Of a stretch of 64,000 bases of DNA, positions 6,191 to 32,979 are shown one piece after another (positions within the stretch are counted from its first letter, which is position 1; every line of letters begins with the position of its first letter). The notes under the pieces were generated by a model. That model was not told the DNA's origin, did not search any database, and saw only the letters and a list, made by a program, of their open reading frames with translations. Where the stretch lies: positions 62,001-126,000 of the IMG/VR virus record IMGVR_UViG_3300005337_000441, one strand, 5' to 3'. The position numbers and the translations under genes were made by a program.

Positions 6191-7159
6191 ATGCGAATGA
6201 AACTCTACGCCTGCGGCGGTGCTGGCATCAACACGGTCAAGCAGTTTGCCCCGTTCAACGGTCAAGCCAATCCGGGCTTTGCCACGATCGAAACCGTCTT
6301 CATCGACACGAGCCGCTCCAACCTGGACAGCAGCATCCCCGAGCAGATGACCTACCTGGTCCAAGAGCTCGACGGTTCGGGCAAGCGCCGTGCCACGAAC
6401 CATGCCGCTCTGTCCGAGAGCATCAACGAGATCCTGCTGGAACACCGTCCTGGCGACATCAACATCATCGTGCACTCTGCCGGCGGTGGCTCGGGCTCGG
6501 TGATCGGCCCGCTACTCACCAACGAACTGCTGGGTCGCGAGCAACTCGTCATCGTCCTGGCCATCGGTTCGACCTCTTCGAAGATCGAGACCGAGAACAC
6601 CAAGAAGACGCTGCAGTCGCTGGAATCGATCAGCCAGCGCCGCTCGATGCCGGTGTGCGTGTACTACCGCGAGAACACGCTGGAAAAGCCCCGTGGCGAC
6701 ATCGACCGCGATGTGTCCACTGCCATCTCGCTGATGACGGCCATCTTCTCGGGCCAGAACCGCGAGTTCGACACCGAAGACCTGCGCAACTTCCTGAACT
6801 ACCCGCGCGTCACGAGCTACCCGGCCAAGCTGTCCTACCTGGACCTGTTTGCCAAGGACATCGACCTGGACACCAAGAACGAGGCCATCGTCTCGCTCAT
6901 CACGCTGTCCAACGGTGAAGTCCCCACCGAAGTGCCTCAGCACGTCGAGTACCAGGCCACGGGTTACCTGCACGAGGCTGCGTTCAAGGTGGTCAAGCAA
7001 TCCATGCCGATCCACACGGCCGTGATCGCCGGTCACTTCAGCAAGCTCATCGGTCGCCTGGACAAGCGTCTGGCCGAGTTCGCTGAAATCCGCTCCACCG
7101 TGCACGAGAAGTCCATCCTCGGCTCCGCCTCCACGACCGACGACGGTATGGTGCTGTAA
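6191..7159 (+). CDS. phuZ: PhuZ phage tubulin
   Basis: 322 aa; CGGAG, IDTS, GSGK, GGGSGS tubulin signature, DTEDL, short acidic tail DDGMVL. Confidence 0.95.
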   Translation: MRMKLYACGGAGINTVKQFAPFNGQANPGFATIETVFIDTSRSNLDSSIPEQMTYLVQELDGSGKRRATNHAALSESINEILLEHRPGDINIIVHSAGGGSGSVIGPLLTNELLGREQLVIVLAIGSTSSKIETENTKKTLQSLESISQRRSMPVCVYYRENTLEKPRGDIDRDVSTAISLMTAIFSGQNREFDTEDLRNFLNYPRVTSYPAKLSYLDLFAKDIDLDTKNEAIVSLITLSNGEVPTEVPQHVEYQATGYLHEAAFKVVKQSMPIHTAVIAGHFSKLIGRLDKRLAEFAEIRSTVHEKSILGSASTTDDGMVL

Positions 7160-8895: not shown

Positions 8896-9312
8896 GTGAC
8901 AGCTCTTGAGTATTTCCTGAAAGCGTTCAACGAGATTCCCAACACGTTGGACTACGACCCCCTATGGCGCGGCGCCCGCTCCAAGGAGTTCGACTACGCG
9001 GTATTCAGCCGTCATTGCGCCAAGCTCCACAACGGGCAAATCGCAACGGCGGAGTCGGATCTCGGACAGAAGATGATTCTGATCGGGACCCGGTTTGGCA
9101 ACGTGGTGATCTTCGAGCGCTATTCTCCTGGCACAGGTGTACTGCCAGCGCTCGGTATCAACCACACCAAACATTTCCGCAAGGGCGGTTGGGTACGCGG
9201 GAGCGACCCCACTCTGCCTGAACTCGAAGTCCTGCTTGGAAACGAAGAAGAACCAAGCAACATCGGCGTGCGCATTGAGCAACTCTATGCGTTCATGCGG
9301 GGTCGGCGATAG
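8896..9312 (+). CDS. hypothetical protein, 'TRxGNV' paralog 3
   Basis: AAGGAG RBS, GTG start; GTRFGNVVIFER. Confidence 0.8.
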   Translation: MTALEYFLKAFNEIPNTLDYDPLWRGARSKEFDYAVFSRHCAKLHNGQIATAESDLGQKMILIGTRFGNVVIFERYSPGTGVLPALGINHTKHFRKGGWVRGSDPTLPELEVLLGNEEEPSNIGVRIEQLYAFMRGRR

Positions 9313-9321
9313 ACATAGCAC

Positions 9322-9372
9322 CACCACTCCGGCAGGCTGTAAGGCCCGCTGGAGTGGTGATGTTTTTTTTTT
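9322..9372 (+). terminator. intrinsic terminator
   Basis: CACCACTCC.../...GGAGTGGTG followed by T10. Confidence 0.8.
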
Positions 9373-9399
9373 CTTTGCCTTTCTGAGAGACACACTGAT

Positions 9400-9416
9400 C
9401 ACATATACTTTCCTTG
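9400..9416 (+). promoter_or_regulatory. class-1 promoter
   Basis: CACATATACT-TTCCT-TG. Confidence 0.75.
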
Positions 9417-9495
9417 AAACCCTCTAAGAGAAATCTCAGCGAGTGGACTTATCTAATGTAAACCCCTGGCTATGCCGTCGTGGAAAGAAACACCC

Positions 9496-11389: not shown

Positions 11390-11817
11390 ACCTGCCCCAG
11401 AGATACATTGTGGATCTCGAAGGTCACGGCAAGGTGTTCTACAACACGATCCGCTCCCTGGGTATCGGGGTGATGCAACCTTTTGATGACCAGATCCTGA
11501 ATGCACGCCAGAAATATGTGTACGACGAGTGCGCATCCCAGATCGGCACGGCGCTCTCGCCGCTGCCGGTTGAGTTTCTGACCGTCTTGTCAACGTTGCC
11601 AAACCCGCAGTACTTCGAGCATTTCGACGACTTCATAAACAGCCCGCAGATCGTGGCGCCGTTCATGGATGCCTTCAAAGTGTTCGCACTGGGGATCTAT
11701 AGTCGCATTCACCAGAAAATCGGCTTCAACCTGGGTTGCGACTATCATTTGGAAGCTGTGACTGAGGACTTCATGGTTGTCTATGTGTCCGCAAAACCCC
11801 AAGGAATCGCACCGTGA
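11386..11817 (+). CDS. hypothetical protein
   Basis: GAGG RBS; overlaps the next gene (GTGA). Confidence 0.7.
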   Translation: MNLPQRYIVDLEGHGKVFYNTIRSLGIGVMQPFDDQILNARQKYVYDECASQIGTALSPLPVEFLTVLSTLPNPQYFEHFDDFINSPQIVAPFMDAFKVFALGIYSRIHQKIGFNLGCDYHLEAVTEDFMVVYVSAKPQGIAP

Positions 11818-14260: not shown

Positions 14261-14600
14261 GTTCGACCAACTCGATCTGCTCGTGCGTCGCATCGATGCA
14301 CTGCCTCCTTCAACGTTCGATGCGATCATGTACACCGACGACGATGATCGCAAGTGGATCCAAGCCCGCATGATCATGTCTGGCGGCTTGCAAGCCAGCG
14401 AGCAGGTCAAAGAGCTGATGACGGAGTTGGTGCGTCTTGTACAGCGCCTCTTCGTCACTGAGAAAAGCCGCTTTGAAAACTTCACGTGGTCACTCTACAT
14501 GAACGGCTACCGTGAACTCACAGCGGGACGGGACCTCAAGGACAAGCAGCACCATGCGCTGTATACACCGTACAACAAATGGTACGTCAGCTTCGGTTGA
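14241..14600 (+). CDS. hypothetical protein
   Basis: GAGGAGG RBS before ATG 14241. Confidence 0.7.
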   Translation: MSPSSPEFDQLDLLVRRIDALPPSTFDAIMYTDDDDRKWIQARMIMSGGLQASEQVKELMTELVRLVQRLFVTEKSRFENFTWSLYMNGYRELTAGRDLKDKQHHALYTPYNKWYVSFG

Positions 14601-14605
14601 TGTAG

Positions 14606-14644
14606 GATGTAAAAACTTGTGTCGTTTTGGTATATCTATTGGAG
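14606..14644 (+). promoter_or_regulatory. class-2 promoter-like motif GATGT-A5-CTT-N11-GTATATCTATTGGAG
   Basis: Near-identical copy with the same 11-nt spacer at 30816-30855, upstream of chimallin. Confidence 0.65.
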
Positions 14645-14649
14645 CGAAA

Positions 14650-15390
14650 TGAGCCACTACTCATGGAGCTTCAAAACAAATGCCCGGAAGCGATTTCGGG
14701 AAGTGGCTAGTCAAACGAGGAAGTCGGAAAGCCTCGTTCGAACAGCTGCGGCACATGACGTTCCGCATGGCTCATACCGGTATAGCAACCACTCGTTTCA
14801 CCCTTCTGGATGAAAACATCGTCCTCGGCGAGAACGCTACCCGAAAAGAGCTGCATCTGCCTGACGAGCCCGGGGAGCAATCCCCGGGCATGTGTTCCGT
14901 TCTTTAACAACTGGAAAAGAAGCCCATGAAAGCCAAGACTCGACTTGGCGCTGGATTCGATCGGTGATAAACCATCTACCAGCCAACGTTCATGGGAACT
15001 GACAGGTGCATTGCCCTCAGCGAGGGATGTGTGCAAAAAACCTGTCGGGGTGCCTAGCGGACTCGTTCGCGAGATGGTGAAAAAGCAGGGAGAAGTTGAG
15101 AAAACCGCTGCGGCGGCTGCTCCTTCTCCCTGCCTGGCATTTAGAGAATCGAATAAAGGACGTGCTTGGGGTGCCGAGACCAGACTCGGTGATGGGTTTT
15201 CGCGAATCACATTCAACCCCCCAAGAAGTAGCGCGTAGGGCGGACGAGAGTCGTTGCCTGATTATCGTGCTGCGGTACAAGCGCCGGGAGTTGCCCAACA
15301 TCCTCCGGCCATGCCCCCTGCCTCTGCATCATCTACCTCGACCGCGCTGGTCCAGGTTCGGTGCGGTTGGCAGGGGCGTGTGCTTTTTTT
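14650..15390 (+). ncRNA. candidate large structured RNA (segment A, possibly two RNAs)
   Basis: No convincing ORF; many helices (14868-14889 GCAA tetraloop, 14955-14961/15148-15154, 15085-15133, GAC-GAGA-GTC); ends in a helix plus T7; shares a module with 15796-16290. Confidence 0.55.
14899..14909 (+). promoter_or_regulatory. boxA (NusB/NusE-binding) consensus match GTTCTTTAACA
   Basis: Exact match to GYTCTTTAANA in a non-coding context. Confidence 0.45.
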
Positions 15391-15528
15391 GCCGTCTGCT
15401 ATTGGTATGGACACCCTGTTAGCTCGGAGAAAGAAAAATGCTCTACCCTTCTTCTTATCGGCAGCTGCTTGCTGCTCTTTCGTTCATATCGCTGCCGGCC
15501 GTGGGGCCGCCGATTGCAACGAAAGACC

Positions 15529-15795
15529 ATGCAGCAAACAACCAAGGAACATCGAGCGCTTCGGCGTCATGAACGTGCACGCCTTCTGAAAAAGCGTGCC
15601 AACTATTGGGGAGGTTGGGTTGCTTTACCTGACCGCGCAGGTAAACTCCTGCACACCCCTTGTAATTGCAGCTGCTTTATGTGTGGCAACCCGCGCAAAT
15701 ACTTCGGTAACGCGCGAGATGCTCTCACTGTAGCAGAGCAACGAGTCACCCAGCGCCAGCTTGGTGAGCACTTCACTCCCGACGAAAGGGAGTGA
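15529..15795 (+). CDS. 88-aa Arg-rich protein with CxCSCxxCGNPRK putative Zn-binding motif
   Basis: In-frame ATG at 15529; RALRRHERARLLKKR followed by HTPCNCSCFMCGNPRKY. Confidence 0.75.
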   Translation: MQQTTKEHRALRRHERARLLKKRANYWGGWVALPDRAGKLLHTPCNCSCFMCGNPRKYFGNARDALTVAEQRVTQRQLGEHFTPDERE

Positions 15796-16290
15796 GAGAT
15801 CCCCTAATTCTGAAACATGTCTCATCGGTGGTGGTTCATTCACCTTCTGGTAATATGACCGCCGTATAGCCGAGAATGTGGGAAGGAGCCAAACCCGTCT
15901 TCGGACGGGAGGTCGTTGAGCACACAAGGGATCTTCACCCATGTTCACGCCCCGGCGTGTCATAGGGTCACGGCTCAAGCGGAACCACATACCTAGGGGC
16001 CCCTGGGCGTGCAGTTGTTACGGGGCAACTGTCAATGGTGGACTGAAAGGTCATTCCGATATAGCTGCTGACAGCGACCTGGACATGAATACCGACAGGG
16101 TCAGCCCGTGTCGGACAAAAAGGCTTGGTGGTGGCTGAGATGCAGACTCAGTGCGGACTCACAGTAGGCCGCGGAAGACCCAAGAAGTGTCGCATGCGTT
16201 GTTAGCGCGCGAGGCGGCGCAAACCTTCATCGCTGGAAGATACTGGAGCAGTTGTCTCCATGACTTTCAGGATGAGGGAGTGCGCTTTTT
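15796..16290 (+). ncRNA. candidate large structured RNA (segment B)
   Basis: GAGATCCC/GGGATCTT closing helix, C(UUCG)G hairpin 15894-15909, CATGTTCA/TGGACATG helix, GAAA-loop hairpin, terminal helix plus T5. Confidence 0.55.
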
Positions 16291-16311
16291 GTTTTACCTC
16301 TTTTGGACCTC

Positions 16312-16821
16312 ATGAGTTTCGAACAAACCCTCGGCAGTAAAGACTGGCTGAATCAAAACGAAACCGCTCTTCGTGAGATGTTTCCTGAAACATGGACTCA
16401 CGTTGAGAACATGAAACTCCTTCCGATCATGTACAGGCTCAAGACCTTGGGCGTGGACTGGCGTGAAGAGAATGAAATCCCGGAGATTCTGACGTTCTTC
16501 AGGAACGCCGGCGTCTACGCCATGAATGCTTCCAAGCAGGTCATGCGAAACCACAAGCATCTCGAATTCGAGATGACCTACAAACCGCAGGATCGTCGCC
16601 TGAGCGAAGTGATCCCGGATGAAACCGAAGAGAAGGAAGACAAAGTCACGATCCCCAATCCGGTCGGAACCATCGCGTGGTTCTTGCTGCTGTTCGGTTG
16701 GATTGGTGGCTTTGTGCTCGCCAAGGGCTTTTGGTCCACGGTGTGTTGTCTGTGTCCTCTGTGGGCCTGGTACTTGGTTGTCGAGCGTCTCTTCCAACTC
16801 TGGGGCATGATTCCCCTGTGA
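16312..16821 (+). CDS. hypothetical protein with C-terminal TM segments
   Basis: Hydrophobic C-terminus; followed by a hairpin. Confidence 0.7.
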   Translation: MSFEQTLGSKDWLNQNETALREMFPETWTHVENMKLLPIMYRLKTLGVDWREENEIPEILTFFRNAGVYAMNASKQVMRNHKHLEFEMTYKPQDRRLSEVIPDETEEKEDKVTIPNPVGTIAWFLLLFGWIGGFVLAKGFWSTVCCLCPLWAWYLVVERLFQLWGMIPL

Positions 16822-16943: not shown

Positions 16944-17381
16944 ATGGATCAAGGTAAGGAAGCAATGAAGTTCTACGTGGTCACCGGTCACGTCATTGTG
17001 GCCGCTGCAAGACCAAAGGCACTGTCTCCTGTGCGGGAACTGGTGGTGGAGGTTGACGTCACGCACCGCCACGTCTTGGAACAGGACTTCAGACTGCATC
17101 GCTATTTGATGGCCTACGTCACGGAGCACGCAACCGAGTCGTTCATCCGTCACCTCAAGGCCGACAAGACGACGGCCAAGTCGATCGGGGGCACCCAGTG
17201 GCGTGTGTCCATTCGCGATCAAGAGTTCAAGCTTTTCCTCACCAGAGCGATGGCCGAGGAATACCTGAACAACCCTGAGCGGCCCAGTGGCCCTCATGAC
17301 CGTTTCACTTTCATGCGGGAGATGATCCTGGAAAACTATGACGACAGCACGAACAGCGTTATGCCTGCGAATCACGTCTAG
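16944..17381 (+). CDS. hypothetical protein
   Basis: GGAGGGAG RBS before ATG 16944. Confidence 0.7.
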   Translation: MDQGKEAMKFYVVTGHVIVAAARPKALSPVRELVVEVDVTHRHVLEQDFRLHRYLMAYVTEHATESFIRHLKADKTTAKSIGGTQWRVSIRDQEFKLFLTRAMAEEYLNNPERPSGPHDRFTFMREMILENYDDSTNSVMPANHV

Positions 17382-30971: not shown

Positions 30972-31077
30972 GAAAAAGGTAGCTGATGACTTGCTTCCCC
31001 CTTGTACACGGTGGGGTGTACCGTGTAGTGTGTTTTAGCTAAAACGTTCTTAGAAAACCTCTTTGGAGAAAATTGCA

Positions 31078-32937
31078 ATGGCAATCCACGACGACCAAAA
31101 CGACGGCAACCGTACCTCCGCTGCAAGCGCGCAGGGCGGTTTCAACGCCTTCGACAGCTTCCACACCGGCGGCCTGTTCGCTGCCCCCATCAGCCAGGGC
31201 ATGGGCTCCGAGTTCTACACCAAGGTGAAGCAGGGCCTGCTGGACCTGTACAAGGACGTCAACCCCAACGTCAAGATCGCCCTGATCGACCTGGACAACG
31301 TCAACAACCCCGCTTTTGACTTCTCCAACATCATCGTCGCCGCGCAGCTGAAGAACGCTCCGGAACTCGGCGTCGCCTACCACATCCTGGCCCTGGAAGC
31401 CACCGGCGAGAAGCTGGGCCCGGTCATGGACACCATCAACAACCAGACCATCGAGATCCAGCGCGTCACCTCCGACACCATCGACACCGCCCTGGTCAAG
31501 GCCGCCGCCGCCAAGGTCGAAGCTGCCTTCCCCGGCGTCGCCAGCCACTGGGTCGATGCGACCGTGGTGCCCGACACCTTCAACCCCGATGACAAGACCG
31601 CCATGCACAAGCTGGCGCTGTTCACCGGCCTGGCCTGCTCCACCGAGCTGCAGATCCACTCGCCTGACTTCCGTGACCTGAACCTGGCTCACATCAAGAA
31701 CGAAGGCCAGCTGACCGTGCGCCTGGACTTCGGCCGCCAGCAAGTCGAGAACATCGTCGGCCAGCCGCAGCGCTCCGACGTCAGCGGCTCCCTGACCAGC
31801 CGCAAGAACGTCCCGGGCCGTCAGGCTCAGGTCAACACCGGTGACAAGGAAGCTCACGTCGCCCGCGTCGGCGGCTTCATCGATCTGGTCTGGGCGCCGC
31901 GCGGCGGTGACACGGGCTTCAACCCGTGGCTCGCCCAGCAGCAGCAACAGCAAATGGCCATGAACCCGATGCTCACGCAGAAGTACGCTGCGCGTCTGGT
32001 CCTGACCGACATCCAATCCCGCTTCGCCTACACGCCTTCGCTGGTGCTGCTGGCCGTGGCCACCTCGCTGACCGCGAGCGACAACAACAACTGGTTCCAA
32101 GCCTACCGTCCCACTCCGTCGGCCGGCAAGGGTTCCATCGACCTCAACGACATCGGCGCTCTGAACATCGAGGCCAACATCTCCAACGAACCCGGCGGCT
32201 TCGGCTCGCGCATCAACACGAAGGGCGAGGAATTCCAGCTGTCGCAGCTGGGCACGCTGATCGGCATGATGGTGCAACCGGGCATGATGCTGGCCATCGA
32301 CGTGCCGGAAGCTGGTCCGCAGTCGTGGTACCTGTCCATGTTCGCCAACGCGGCGAACGGCAGCCAGGCCGCCTACGACGCCATCTACAACGCCGCCAAC
32401 GAGCTGACCAACGGCGCCTTCAGCCGCCACTTCGCTGCTGGCACGCAGATGTTCGTCGACACGAACAACCGCGTCCACCTCGGCAACTGGACGGACCGTC
32501 TGGGCAACAAGCGCGACATCCGCGACATCGACTACCTGGCCGTCGCCAACCTGCTGGGCGACTCCAACCCGTCGGCGATCCGCGACTGGAGCGACACGTT
32601 CCTGCGCACCGAGTACCCGCTGCCCCAGCGTCTGGCCGCTCGCAAGCGCATGATCAGCAGCCTCACCGGCGAGACCGCGGTCTTCACCGGCTTCGCTCAG
32701 CGCGTCACCTTCAGCGGCAAGTTCCTGGCCGCCTTCGGTGCTGCTCTGCGTGAAGTCAGCCCGCCGATGCGCGTCACCACCCCGCTGTCGGCTTCCGAGC
32801 TGAGCAACCAGCGCGGCTACGCCGGCTTCGCCGAGCAGGCCATGCTGGCTCCGGGCCAGACGTTCGCCCAGGTCGGCGGCTTCGGCAACGCCAACGCCTA
32901 CGCCGGTTACTTCGGTCCGGCGCAGCGCTGGATGTAA
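31078..32937 (+). CDS. chmA: chimallin, phage nucleus shell protein
   Basis: 619 aa; extreme high-expression codon bias; motifs such as GFIDLVW, DIGALNIE, RVHLG.WTD..G.KRDIRDIDYLA and G.AQRVTF; co-occurs with PhuZ and nvRNAP genes. Confidence 0.88.
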   Translation: MAIHDDQNDGNRTSAASAQGGFNAFDSFHTGGLFAAPISQGMGSEFYTKVKQGLLDLYKDVNPNVKIALIDLDNVNNPAFDFSNIIVAAQLKNAPELGVAYHILALEATGEKLGPVMDTINNQTIEIQRVTSDTIDTALVKAAAAKVEAAFPGVASHWVDATVVPDTFNPDDKTAMHKLALFTGLACSTELQIHSPDFRDLNLAHIKNEGQLTVRLDFGRQQVENIVGQPQRSDVSGSLTSRKNVPGRQAQVNTGDKEAHVARVGGFIDLVWAPRGGDTGFNPWLAQQQQQQMAMNPMLTQKYAARLVLTDIQSRFAYTPSLVLLAVATSLTASDNNNWFQAYRPTPSAGKGSIDLNDIGALNIEANISNEPGGFGSRINTKGEEFQLSQLGTLIGMMVQPGMMLAIDVPEAGPQSWYLSMFANAANGSQAAYDAIYNAANELTNGAFSRHFAAGTQMFVDTNNRVHLGNWTDRLGNKRDIRDIDYLAVANLLGDSNPSAIRDWSDTFLRTEYPLPQRLAARKRMISSLTGETAVFTGFAQRVTFSGKFLAAFGAALREVSPPMRVTTPLSASELSNQRGYAGFAEQAMLAPGQTFAQVGGFGNANAYAGYFGPAQRWM

Positions 32938-32979
32938 AACCAGCACAGGCCAGGTTCGCCTGGCTTGTCATTGCAACTT

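What the first reader, a model, noticed from the sequence alone, without database searches (positions are those of the whole stretch)
14606..16290. Candidate phage RNP system: two paralogous large structured RNAs flanking an Arg/Cys-rich microprotein
Seen: in an otherwise gene-dense genome, ~1.65 kb holds only one credible ORF (15529-15795), and both flanks are packed with helices and stable tetraloops (GCAA 14868-14889, UUCG 15894-15909, GAGA, GAAA). The flanks share a module. Copy A: GCTTGG(15164)..CCGAG-ACCAGA-CTCGG-TG-hairpin..CCAAGAAGT(15229). Copy B: GCTTGG(16123)..CTGAG-ATGCAGA-CTCAG-TG-hairpin..CCAAGAAGT(16188). CTTGG/CCAAG closes a junction in both, and the C-G to T-A swap is compensatory. 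Both copies also have AACCA..TACC (14970, 15983) followed by ATGGTG (15074, 16035) inside a long-range helix (ATTCGAT/ATCGAAT; CATGTTCA/TGGACATG), and both end in a helix plus U-tract (15390, 16290). Inference: a duplicated ncRNA family of roughly 350-470 nt per copy, possibly bound by the intervening protein. I could not match it to tRNA, tmRNA, RNase P or intron hallmarks.
Basis: partly seen in the sequence, partly recalled or inferred. Interest (0 to 1): 0.9.

Follow-up and report, generated by a model that had tools for sequence, protein, structure and literature searches.

The report
Conserved structured RNAs in jumbo phage
A 1.7-kb gap in a nucleus-forming jumbo phage genome holds structured non-coding RNAs that match no catalogued RNA family; two of them share a small three-helix core that recurs in two other jumbo phages, and their function is unknown.

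Summary
Window 14611-16300 is non-coding apart from the 88-aa gene (15529-15795). It contains three RNA units on the + strand, each ending in a very stable hairpin plus a U-rich tail: A0 (~14611-14910), A (~14925-15390) and B (~15796-16295).

- **Structure is conserved.** A 93%-identical relative (L125) keeps the predicted helices of A0 and A: 10 two-sided and 10 one-sided changes, no broken pairs in 237.
- **B is strongly constrained.** It diverges 1.2% in L125, against 3.9% for the next gene. It is also recognisable in a phage (L096) whose neighbouring protein is only 47% identical.
- **A and B share a core.** A covariance model of the ~90-nt three-way junction, built without copy A, finds copy A as its only other hit in the window. 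It also finds one hit in a third jumbo phage (L013).
- **No known family.** Rfam, tRNA and intron searches find nothing.

Only the junction core and the terminator tail are shared, not 350-470 nt. The RNA-protein partnership has no support: the core is absent beside about 50 other members of the protein family, and L013 has the core without the protein.

Most likely these are terminator-bounded leader RNAs of unknown effector.

The parts
14601..14610 (.). Junction where relatives carry an extra methyl-accepting chemotaxis protein (MCP) gene
   Evidence: L011 matches the window up to 14600 and then runs into an MCP ORF. L125, from the same sample, matches from 14611 onward.
14611..14910 (+). 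Unit A0: structured non-coding RNA ending in the GCAA hairpin (14868-14889) plus a U-rich tail. The strand is not settled.
   Evidence: Window/L125 consensus fold has z -4.25, with 86 pairs: 4 two-sided changes, 2 one-sided, 0 broken. Substitutions in ORF 14680-14907 fall 8/8/6 by codon position. The terminal hairpin folds at -24 kcal/mol, z -4.5. The minus strand folds equally well.
14925..15158 (+). RNA A, 5' domain: several hairpins that diverge fast in sequence but keep their helices
   Evidence: 14.5% diverged from L125. Consensus fold z -6.1, with 70 pairs: 5 two-sided changes, 5 one-sided, 0 broken. Plus strand -83.7 against minus strand -62.8 kcal/mol. No match to the model of B's 5' domain.
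15159..15237 (+). RNA A, three-way-junction core: P1 CUUGG/CCAAG, P2 CCGAG-ACCAGA-CUCGG, and a variable P3
   Evidence: It is the only other hit in the window for model R2, which was built from B and L096 only (16.5 bits, E 0.07). There are 2 substitutions against L125; one turns a P1 pair from U-A to U-G.
15238..15390 (+). RNA A, 3' part: a long terminal hairpin (about 15307-15382) followed by a U7 run, read as an intrinsic terminator
   Evidence: The hairpin folds at -47.7 kcal/mol, z -5.4. The tail GGGCGTGTGCTTTTT has one counterpart in the window, in copy B.
15391..15528 (+). Unconstrained spacer or leader ahead of the 88-aa gene
   Evidence: 23% diverged from L125. No conserved fold, z -0.6.
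15529..15795 (+). 88-aa Arg- and Cys-rich protein of family phrog_4499 (T5.055-like), function unknown
   Evidence: PHROG E 3e-19. There are 720 representative relatives, with conserved R..RRH, CSCxMCGNPR. No Pfam, NCBIfam, PDB sequence or PDB fold match. Codon usage is atypical for this phage, score 0.00. Against L125, all but one amino-acid change fall in the first 8 codons.
15796..16109 (+). RNA B, 5' part: includes the UUCG hairpin (15894-15909) and a multi-helix domain (15969-16121) shared with L096
   Evidence: Within unit B, which has 6 substitutions in 500 nt against L125. B/L096 consensus fold -50.9 against -32.9 +/- 4.7 for column shuffles, with 13 two-sided changes against 6.8 +/- 2.1; the reverse strand gives -34.4.
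16110..16200 (+). RNA B, three-way-junction core: GGAC, P1 CUUGG/CCAAG, P2 CUGAG-AUGCAGA-CUCAG, variable P3, then AGAAGUG
   Evidence: Identical in L125. Conserved in L096 and L013 with compensatory changes in P1 and P2: all 15 pairs are standard pairs in every sequence and 5 pairs carry two-sided changes, a value reached by 1 of 500 shuffles.
16201..16295 (+). RNA B, 3' part: terminal hairpin (16216-16286) followed by UUUUUGUUUU, read as an intrinsic terminator 13-22 nt before the next start codon
   Evidence: The hairpin folds at -37.4 kcal/mol, z -5.3. Its single changed pair against L125 goes from U-A to U-G.
16312..16821 (+). Downstream 169-aa gene with a C-terminal membrane domain (phrog_16613); its start leaves no room for a promoter after B
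   Evidence: PHROG hit. Substitutions against L125 fall 3/0/17 by codon position. Its 47%-identical homologue in L096 is also preceded by RNA B.

Best explanation
Window 14611-16300 of this nucleus-forming jumbo phage is an island of structured non-coding RNAs transcribed with the surrounding genes on the + strand. The phage carries chimallin, PhuZ tubulin and a split RNA polymerase.

The island has three units, A0, A and B. Each ends in a very stable hairpin followed by a short spacer and a U-rich run, like the intrinsic terminators described for phiKZ.

A and B share a ~90-nt three-way junction: GGAC, P1, P2 with a 6-7-nt loop, a variable P3, the return strand of P1, then AGAAGUR. The same junction occurs in two other jumbo-phage lineages. 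In every case it lies 40-140 nt upstream of the terminal hairpin and of an ORF on the same strand.

The mechanism I commit to is that these are leader RNAs.
- Transcription from an upstream promoter makes the folded RNA.
- Some transcripts stop at the terminator, releasing a stable small RNA.
- Read-through transcripts carry the downstream small gene: the 88-aa gene after A and the 169-aa membrane-protein gene after B.
- The conserved junction is the site where an unknown factor, a protein or a small ligand, acts to set the balance between termination and read-through.

Shown here: the region is non-coding; the structure is conserved with compensatory changes; the + strand is preferred for A and B; terminator-like ends exist; and the arrangement recurs in relatives.

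Inferred: the transcripts themselves, termination and read-through, and any effector.
For: **Non-coding.**

**Structure kept across a 93%-identical relative.** No broken pairs among the 237 predicted for A0 and A, with 10 two-sided and 10 one-sided changes; z is -4.25, -6.1 and -2.4 against column shuffles.

**Constraint on B.** B diverges 1.2% against 3.9% for the neighbouring gene and 23% for the spacer. B is also conserved in L096, where the neighbouring protein is only 47% identical: consensus-fold z -3.8, 13 two-sided changes, and the plus strand is preferred.

**Junction core.** The model built without copy A finds copy A as the only other hit in the window. It also hits L013 in the non-coding gap after the same DHH gene. 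In the four-sequence alignment all pairs are standard, and 5 carry two-sided changes.

**L013 gap.** It is GC-enriched, 42% against 35%, and folds far better on the plus strand.

**Terminal hairpins.** z -4.5 to -6.4.

**No room for a promoter.** Only 13-30 nt separate the end of B from the start codon, both in the window and in L096.

**Precedent.** phiKZ has a conserved hairpin-type terminator motif and 17 ncRNA candidates derived from 5' UTRs by premature termination (PMC10914365).
Against: - There are no transcript data.
- By eye I found no conserved antiterminator pairing between the junction and the terminator arms.
- The downstream genes differ: an 88-aa Arg/Cys protein, a 169-aa membrane protein, and an 85-aa membrane protein in L013.
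- In A and L013 the terminator lies 105-139 nt from the start codon, room enough for a promoter.
- B has about 300 nt of conserved structure upstream of the junction, more than a simple attenuator needs.
- The junction cores alone are not unusually stable (z -1.7 to +1.1).
- Only four instances in three lineages are known, so covariation statistics are thin, and the alignment used was fitted to the model.
- B's low divergence from L125 could partly reflect recent recombination, because divergence along this pair is very patchy.
Confidence: 0.45

Rival explanations
1. These are free-standing, trans-acting structured RNAs. A0, A and B would be independent genes whose products act away from their own locus, for example as a protein sponge, a scaffold, or an RNA involved in defence or in the phage nucleus. 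The terminators would simply mark the gene ends.
For: B is large, about 500 nt. Its many helices carry conserved GNRA and UUCG loops, and it is better conserved than the flanking proteins. The downstream genes are unrelated to one another. Each unit has its own strong terminator. The P2 loop is self-complementary in B and L096 (UGCA) and in L013 (UAUA), as expected for a kissing-loop contact; this is read and is an inference. Phage tRNA regions such as that of T5 carry stable RNAs of unknown function.
Against: No promoter has been identified for any unit. B ends 13-22 nt before the next start codon, so it is physically part of that gene's upstream transcript unless the gene has an internal promoter. 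No target or partner is known.
Confidence: 0.3
2. One reading: the 88-aa Arg/Cys-rich protein binds the shared junction of A and B, forming a dedicated RNA-protein system or regulating itself through A.
For: The protein lies between the two copies. It has an Arg-rich N-terminal helix and an invariant CSCxxC cluster. Its family is enriched in phage tRNA arrays: 17 of 50 loci against 2 of 27 control loci, Fisher p 0.012. That pattern suggests an RNA-related role.
Against: The junction model finds nothing in the ~50 other phrog_4499 loci searched. L013 has the junction but no CxCxxC[GST][NS]xR motif in 20 kb. The gene's codon usage is foreign to this phage, and the spacer before it is unconstrained, which suggests an independently acquired small gene. 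There is no structural or family evidence of RNA binding.
Confidence: 0.1
3. The junction is the aptamer of a new riboswitch class that senses a small molecule and controls the terminator that follows it.
For: The layout is typical of an aptamer: a closing helix P1, conserved junction and loop nucleotides, a variable-length P3, and a terminator followed by an ORF downstream. Riboswitches encoded by phages are known (my own knowledge).
Against: There is no consistent gene function downstream. I found no conserved alternative pairing. The distribution is very narrow. No Rfam riboswitch class matches.
Confidence: 0.1
4. There is no RNA function. The region would be decayed genes, a DNA-level element such as recombination or protein-binding palindromes, or a chance pattern.
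For: Fold z-scores are no better than those of some coding controls. A-to-B sequence similarity is marginal. The locus between the DHH gene and the DNA polymerase gene is a variable hot spot: MCP is inserted in some relatives and the stretch is compact in L119.
Against: Helices are kept through two-sided and G-U-type changes with no broken pairs. The plus strand is clearly preferred for A and B, which a DNA palindrome would not show. B is more conserved than the neighbouring proteins in two independent comparisons.
Confidence: 0.05

Closest known systems
phiKZ 5'UTR-derived ncRNA candidates and the phiKZ conserved intrinsic-terminator motif (PMC10914365, read)
   Same: Both occur in nucleus-forming jumbo phages. 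In both, RNAs sit upstream of ORFs and end at a stable hairpin followed by a short T-rich element. Such units are numerous in each genome.
   Different: No sequence or structural relationship has been shown. The phiKZ candidates are mostly shorter, with 89 and 196 nt quoted. No shared three-way-junction core has been reported there. Here nothing has been tested at the transcript level.
Large phage-associated structured RNAs GOLLD and ROOL, and the raiA motif (Rfam)
   Same: All are large, multi-helix, non-coding RNAs of unknown function, often carried on phage DNA and rich in stable tetraloops.
   Different: No Rfam model matches, even at E up to 10. The units here are smaller, 300-500 nt. No tRNA genes are adjacent.
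Stable RNAs of unknown function in the tRNA region of T5-like phages (rnaI, rnaIII, rna2H, as annotated in DT57C)
   Same: The T5.055 homologue of the 88-aa protein lies at the edge of that tRNA and stable-RNA block. Both are phage RNAs with no known role.
   Different: The T5 RNAs are about 105-170 nt and embedded among tRNAs. The junction model does not hit the DT57C locus.
Three-way-junction riboswitch aptamers with terminator expression platforms, such as the purine and TPP classes (my own knowledge of the families)
   Same: A closing helix, conserved junction nucleotides, a variable peripheral stem, and a terminator followed by an ORF downstream.
   Different: No match to any known class. 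No ligand, no antiterminator, and no coherent regulon.

Membership tests
Any Rfam 15 family (tRNA, tmRNA, RNase P, group I/II introns, GOLLD, ROOL, raiA, OLE, riboswitches, small ribozymes) | A score at or near the family's covariance-model threshold | tested here: not met
   No hits at gathering score in the 64-kb window. At E up to 10 in 14300-16600 only two spurious eukaryotic hits appeared. ARAGORN found no tRNA or tmRNA.
Conserved structured RNA (general criterion) | Helices maintained by compensatory substitutions in homologues, more often than in controls | tested here: met
   The caveats are the small number of sequences and one alignment that was fitted to the model.
Conserved structured RNA (general criterion) | Folding energy clearly better than shuffled sequence and better than the local coding background | tested here: inconclusive
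   14601-15400 gives z -5.2 and 15796-16302 gives z -2.3. In 300-nt windows, coding controls reach -4 to -4.8 and B lies near 0 to -1.8.
   R2, built from B and L096, finds copy A as the only other hit in the window, at E 0.07.
   The 5'-domain model R3 finds nothing in A or L013, even with filters off. A chained alignment gives z 2.2.
Transcription-attenuating leader or riboswitch | A structured element followed by an intrinsic terminator and then an ORF on the same strand | tested here: met
   All four instances, by reading the sequence and by the hairpin energies.
Transcription-attenuating leader or riboswitch | A conserved, mutually exclusive antiterminator pairing | tested here: inconclusive
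   Inspection by eye of the four instances found no shared alternative helix. No dedicated computation was run.
Transcription-attenuating leader or riboswitch | Effector-dependent read-through | not testable with these tools
   This needs transcription or reporter assays.
RNA-protein system with the phrog_4499 protein | The RNA and the protein co-occur across genomes | tested here: not met
   No junction hits in the ~50 other phrog_4499 loci searched. The L013 junction has no such protein within 20 kb.
phrog_4499 (T5.055-like small proteins) | A significant profile match and the conserved motif | tested here: met
   E 3e-19. R..RRH, CSCxMCGNPR are conserved in the 40-sequence alignment.

The most novel reading that the evidence does not exclude
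These are founding members of a new class of large, tertiary-folded RNAs specific to nucleus-forming (chimallin-encoding) jumbo phages. Their conserved three-way junction would be either a new ligand- or protein-sensing switch, or, through its self-complementary P2 loop, a contact for RNA self-assembly. They would be held under stronger selection than the neighbouring proteins.
Probability: 0.3. Interest if true: 0.8.

Novelty: new variant of a known kind. Interest (0 to 1): 0.62.

Why it matters
RNA biology in nucleus-forming jumbo phages is largely unexplored. Transcription takes place inside a protein shell and translation outside it, so leader RNAs, exported RNAs and stable non-coding RNAs could carry regulatory roles with no counterpart in other phages.

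Here about 1.3 kb of RNA sequence matches no catalogued family. One unit is more conserved than the adjacent genes, and a compact junction motif is shared by three phage lineages.

That gives a concrete, clonable object of about 90 nt for structure probing, searches for a binding partner, and reporter assays.

It also shows that gene callers mis-annotate this locus. They called a non-coding ORF and an antisense ORF, and they missed the real 88-aa gene.

Tried and rejected
- **Stop-codon recoding.** Rejected: all three stop codons occur in all frames.
- **Degenerate tRNA array.** Suggested by the T5 context of the protein. Rejected: no ARAGORN or Rfam tRNA signal.
- **Cassette replacing an MCP gene.** My own interim reading from L011 and L012. 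It was wrong. L125, from the same sample, carries the whole cassette at 93% identity, so MCP is an extra insertion at 14600/14611.
- **Decayed MCP pseudogene.** No tblastx signal.
- **Model R1.** Built with a structure line shifted by one column, so it was discarded.
- **Exact-pattern scans.**
  - IMG/VR and JGI metagenomes returned only the source contig plus chance matches in coding DNA.
  - GTDB genomes returned only a chance match in coding DNA.
  - One further IMG/VR scan was wasted on a wrong loop length.
- **Known jumbo phages.** RP12 and AgentSmith are gene-dense around their DHH genes and give no junction hit.
- **More distant DHH neighbourhoods.** L118-L124 give no hit.
- **The 88-aa protein.** A word-based homologue search found nothing. 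Pfam, NCBIfam, PDB sequence and PDB fold searches were all negative.
- **Flanking-gap script.** My script for ORF-free gaps around the protein's homologues was flawed, so I did not use it.
- **Fold z-scores alone.** They do not separate the region from coding controls.
Full report
**Source and setting**

The window is part of IMG/VR contig UViG_3300005337_000441, 215,768 bp. The same phage appears as a 257,852-bp ENA contig that is 100% identical over window 6312-26821.

It is a distant nucleus-forming jumbo phage. The evidence:
- chimallin at 31063-32937 and PhuZ-type tubulin at 6191-7159;
- a split RNA polymerase beta subunit and a phiKZ-type DNA polymerase;
- a best DNA polymerase identity to any catalogued phage of 41%.

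The region itself has no nucleotide match among 50,697 phage records.

**Check of the observation**

The gap is non-coding apart from 15529-15795:
- All three stop codons interrupt every frame.
- A codon-usage log-odds score trained on 22 genes of the window gives 0.23-0.98 for real genes. It gives -0.59 to +0.03 for the candidate ORFs, except 14680-14907 at 0.23.

A Logan contig from a 93%-identical relative (L125) settles the question. Both ORFs stay open in it, but their substitutions show no codon-position bias. In 14680-14907 they fall 8/8/6, and in 14945-15238 they fall 10/12/13. The real downstream gene shows 3/0/17.

The 88-aa ORF is a real gene:
- It matches phrog_4499 at E 3e-19.
- It has 720 relatives among 50%-identity cluster representatives.
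- The conserved signature is R..RRH, CSCxMCGNPR.

**Is the structure more than chance?**

Energy alone does not decide.
- Long folds give z -5.2 for 14601-15400 and -2.3 for 15796-16302.
- A 300-nt sliding scan shows coding neighbours reaching -4 to -4.8, while B sits between 0 and -1.8.
- Plain A-to-B sequence similarity is marginal.

The comparative data are what count.

*First comparison: window against L125, with the consensus fold scored against column shuffles.*

| Segment | z | Pairs | Two-sided changes | One-sided changes | Broken |
|---|---|---|---|---|---|
| A0, 14611-14925 | -4.25 | 86 | 4 | 2 | 0 |
| A 5' domain, 14925-15160 | -6.1 | 70 | 5 | 5 | 0 |
| A 3' part, 15155-15395 | -2.4 | 81 | 1 | 3 | 0 |
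| Spacer, 15395-15530 | -0.6 | 28 | 1 | 2 | 0 |

Clear examples of compensatory change are 14686/14697 G-C to A-U, 14717/14735 G-C to A-U, 15016/15024 C-G to U-A and 15005/15042 G-C to A-U.

*Second comparison: divergence from L125.*

| Segment | Divergence |
|---|---|
| RNA B (500 nt) | 1.2% |
| B junction core | 0% |
| A junction core | 2.5% |
| 169-aa gene | 3.9% |
| 88-aa gene | 8.2% |
| A 5' domain | 14.5% |
| Spacer | 23% |

*Third comparison: a much more distant relative, L096.* Its homologue of the 169-aa protein is only 47% identical. It still carries a recognisable RNA B in its 342-nt upstream leader.
- The B/L096 consensus fold scores -50.9 kcal/mol, against -32.9 +/- 4.7 for column shuffles.
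- There are 13 two-sided changes, against 6.8 +/- 2.1 in shuffles.
- The reverse strand scores only -34.4.

**The shared core**

I built a covariance model (R2) of the ~100-nt junction from B and L096 only.
- In the 64-kb window its only other hit is copy A, at 15159-15237 on the + strand (16.5 bits, E 0.07).
- Among 61 other loci it hits only L013 and L014 (the same phage) at 11710-11798 (23.7 bits, E 4e-4 to 7e-3).

L013 is an AT-rich phage that encodes PhuZ. Its DHH protein is 40% identical to the window's, and the hit lies in a 616-nt non-coding gap just after that gene.

In the four-sequence alignment all 15 pairs are standard pairs. Five pairs carry two-sided changes, a value reached by 1 of 500 shuffles. 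With the partners slid by one to three columns, only 15-48% of cells pair.
- P1 changes from CUUGG/CCAAG to CUAUG/CAUAG in L013.
- P2 changes from CUGAG/CUCAG to CAGGG/CCCUG in L096 and to CCGAG/CUCGG in copy A.
- P3 differs in length and sequence in every instance.
- GGAC before P1, the P2 loop and AGAAGUR after P1 are conserved.

That alignment was fitted to the model, so it leans towards the structure. However, the P1 and P2 columns are anchored by flanking sequence identity. In isolation L013's minimum-energy fold prefers a different closing helix.

The L013 gap is GC-enriched, 42% against 35% for the genome. It folds at -154 kcal/mol (z -3.6) on the plus strand and at -116 on the minus strand.

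**Limits of the paralogy**

A model of B's 5' domain (R3) finds only its two training sequences, even with filters off.

What A and B demonstrably share is the junction core and the 3' tail, GGGNGTGNGCTTTTT. That tail has only these two exact matches in the window.

**Ends of the units**

Each unit ends in a very stable hairpin, followed by about 7 nt and a U-rich run.

| Unit | Hairpin energy (kcal/mol) | z |
|---|---|---|
| A0 | -24 | -4.5 |
| A | -47.7 | -5.4 |
| B | -37.4 | -5.3 |
| L013 | -33.7 | -6.4 |
| L096 | -32.2 | -6.0 |

Similar tails occur at other intergenic sites of the window, for example 31027 and 37546. This therefore looks like the phage's ordinary terminator type.

For phiKZ, a conserved C/G-rich hairpin terminator motif followed by TTAT has been reported. 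So have 17 ncRNA candidates that arise from premature termination in 5' UTRs (PMC10914365).

B ends 13-22 nt before the start of the 169-aa gene, and in L096 the gap is 30 nt. The gene must therefore be transcribed through B.

**Mechanism**

The best-supported reading is that A, B and probably A0 are structured leader RNAs bounded by terminators.
- Terminated transcripts give stable small RNAs.
- Read-through transcripts carry the downstream small genes.
- The conserved junction is where an unknown effector acts.

This mechanism is inferred from the layout and from the phiKZ precedent. It has not been shown, and I put it at 0.45.

The main rival, at 0.3, is free-standing trans-acting RNAs. It is favoured by the size and strong conservation of B and by the unrelated downstream genes.

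One untested detail points to a possible kissing-loop contact. The central four bases of the P2 loop are self-complementary in B and L096 (UGCA) and in L013 (UAUA), though not in copy A.

**The RNA-protein idea**

It is not supported.
- The junction is absent from the ~50 other phrog_4499 loci searched.
- L013 has the junction but no protein with the family's Cys motif in 20 kb.
- The 88-aa gene has codon usage foreign to this phage and sits behind an unconstrained spacer.

The family does have a notable habit. In IMG/VR, 17 of 50 non-redundant loci have tRNA genes within 2.5 kb, and the gene often lies inside a tRNA array. In 27 control loci the figure is 2 (Fisher p 0.012). In T5-like phages the gene borders the tRNA and stable-RNA block.

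That pattern fits either an RNA-related function or a small mobile gene that settles in RNA-gene islands. The AlphaFold model is helical, of moderate confidence (pLDDT 72), and has no PDB neighbour.

**Locus dynamics**

The stretch between the DHH gene and the DNA polymerase gene is a variable hot spot.
- L011 and L012 carry a methyl-accepting chemotaxis protein gene right after window position 14600.
- L125, from the same sample as L011, resumes at 14611.
- L119 has only one small gene between DHH and the polymerase.

**Novelty and caveats**

No Rfam family matches, and I found no paper describing this RNA.

The distribution is narrow: three lineages, all from metagenomes. Exact-pattern scans of IMG/VR, JGI metagenomes and GTDB genomes found no further members. 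Those scans need exact matches to the pattern, so diverged members would have been missed.

Covariation rests on few sequences, and no transcript evidence exists.

Noticed in passing
L011:2191-3453 and L012:2398-3522; insertion point at window 14600/14611: Two relatives of this nucleus-forming jumbo phage carry a full methyl-accepting chemotaxis protein gene (4HB_MCP, HAMP and MCPsignal domains) that the window phage lacks. This is an unusual auxiliary gene for a phage.
   Followed up: partly
IMG/VR loci L016-L094 (for example L074, L080, L083, L093) and DT57C locus L001: The phrog_4499 small protein family sits inside or next to phage tRNA gene arrays far more often than control loci do: 17 of 50 against 2 of 27, p 0.012. 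Its function is unknown.
   Followed up: partly
window 15529-15795, equivalent to L095 about 9218-9484: The public gene call on the ENA contig misses the real 88-aa gene and calls a 66-aa antisense ORF instead. It also calls the non-coding ORF 14680-14907 as a gene.
   Followed up: yes
window 14901-15100, 15401-15600 and 17001-17059, compared with L125: Divergence between the two 93%-identical phages is very patchy, from 0-1% to 17-25% per 100 nt. This suggests mosaic recombination. It includes near-complete replacement of a hairpin interior at 14955-14976 while the closing stem is kept.
   Followed up: partly
L013:10865-11231 and L013:12507-13110: Two further ORF-poor gaps of 370 and 600 nt flank the small membrane-protein genes next to the L013 junction RNA. 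They have no match to either RNA model, and their content is unknown.
   Followed up: no
window 14626-14642, 15399-15410 and 15846-15858: Short related words (CTATTGG, TGGTAT, CTGGTAATATGAC) occur near the start of unit A0, in the spacer after A, and about 50 nt inside B. They may be promoter elements; CTATTGG occurs only 4 times in the window.
   Followed up: no
window 31039-32946: The chimallin gene is markedly GC-rich, 63-66% against about 55%. It carries a complete 635-codon antisense ORF with no family match, probably a by-product of its composition.
   Followed up: partly
window 15466-15536: A 26-nt imperfect inverted repeat would bury the start codon of the 88-aa gene. The region is unconstrained in L125 (23% diverged, no conserved fold), so this is probably not functional.
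   Followed up: yes
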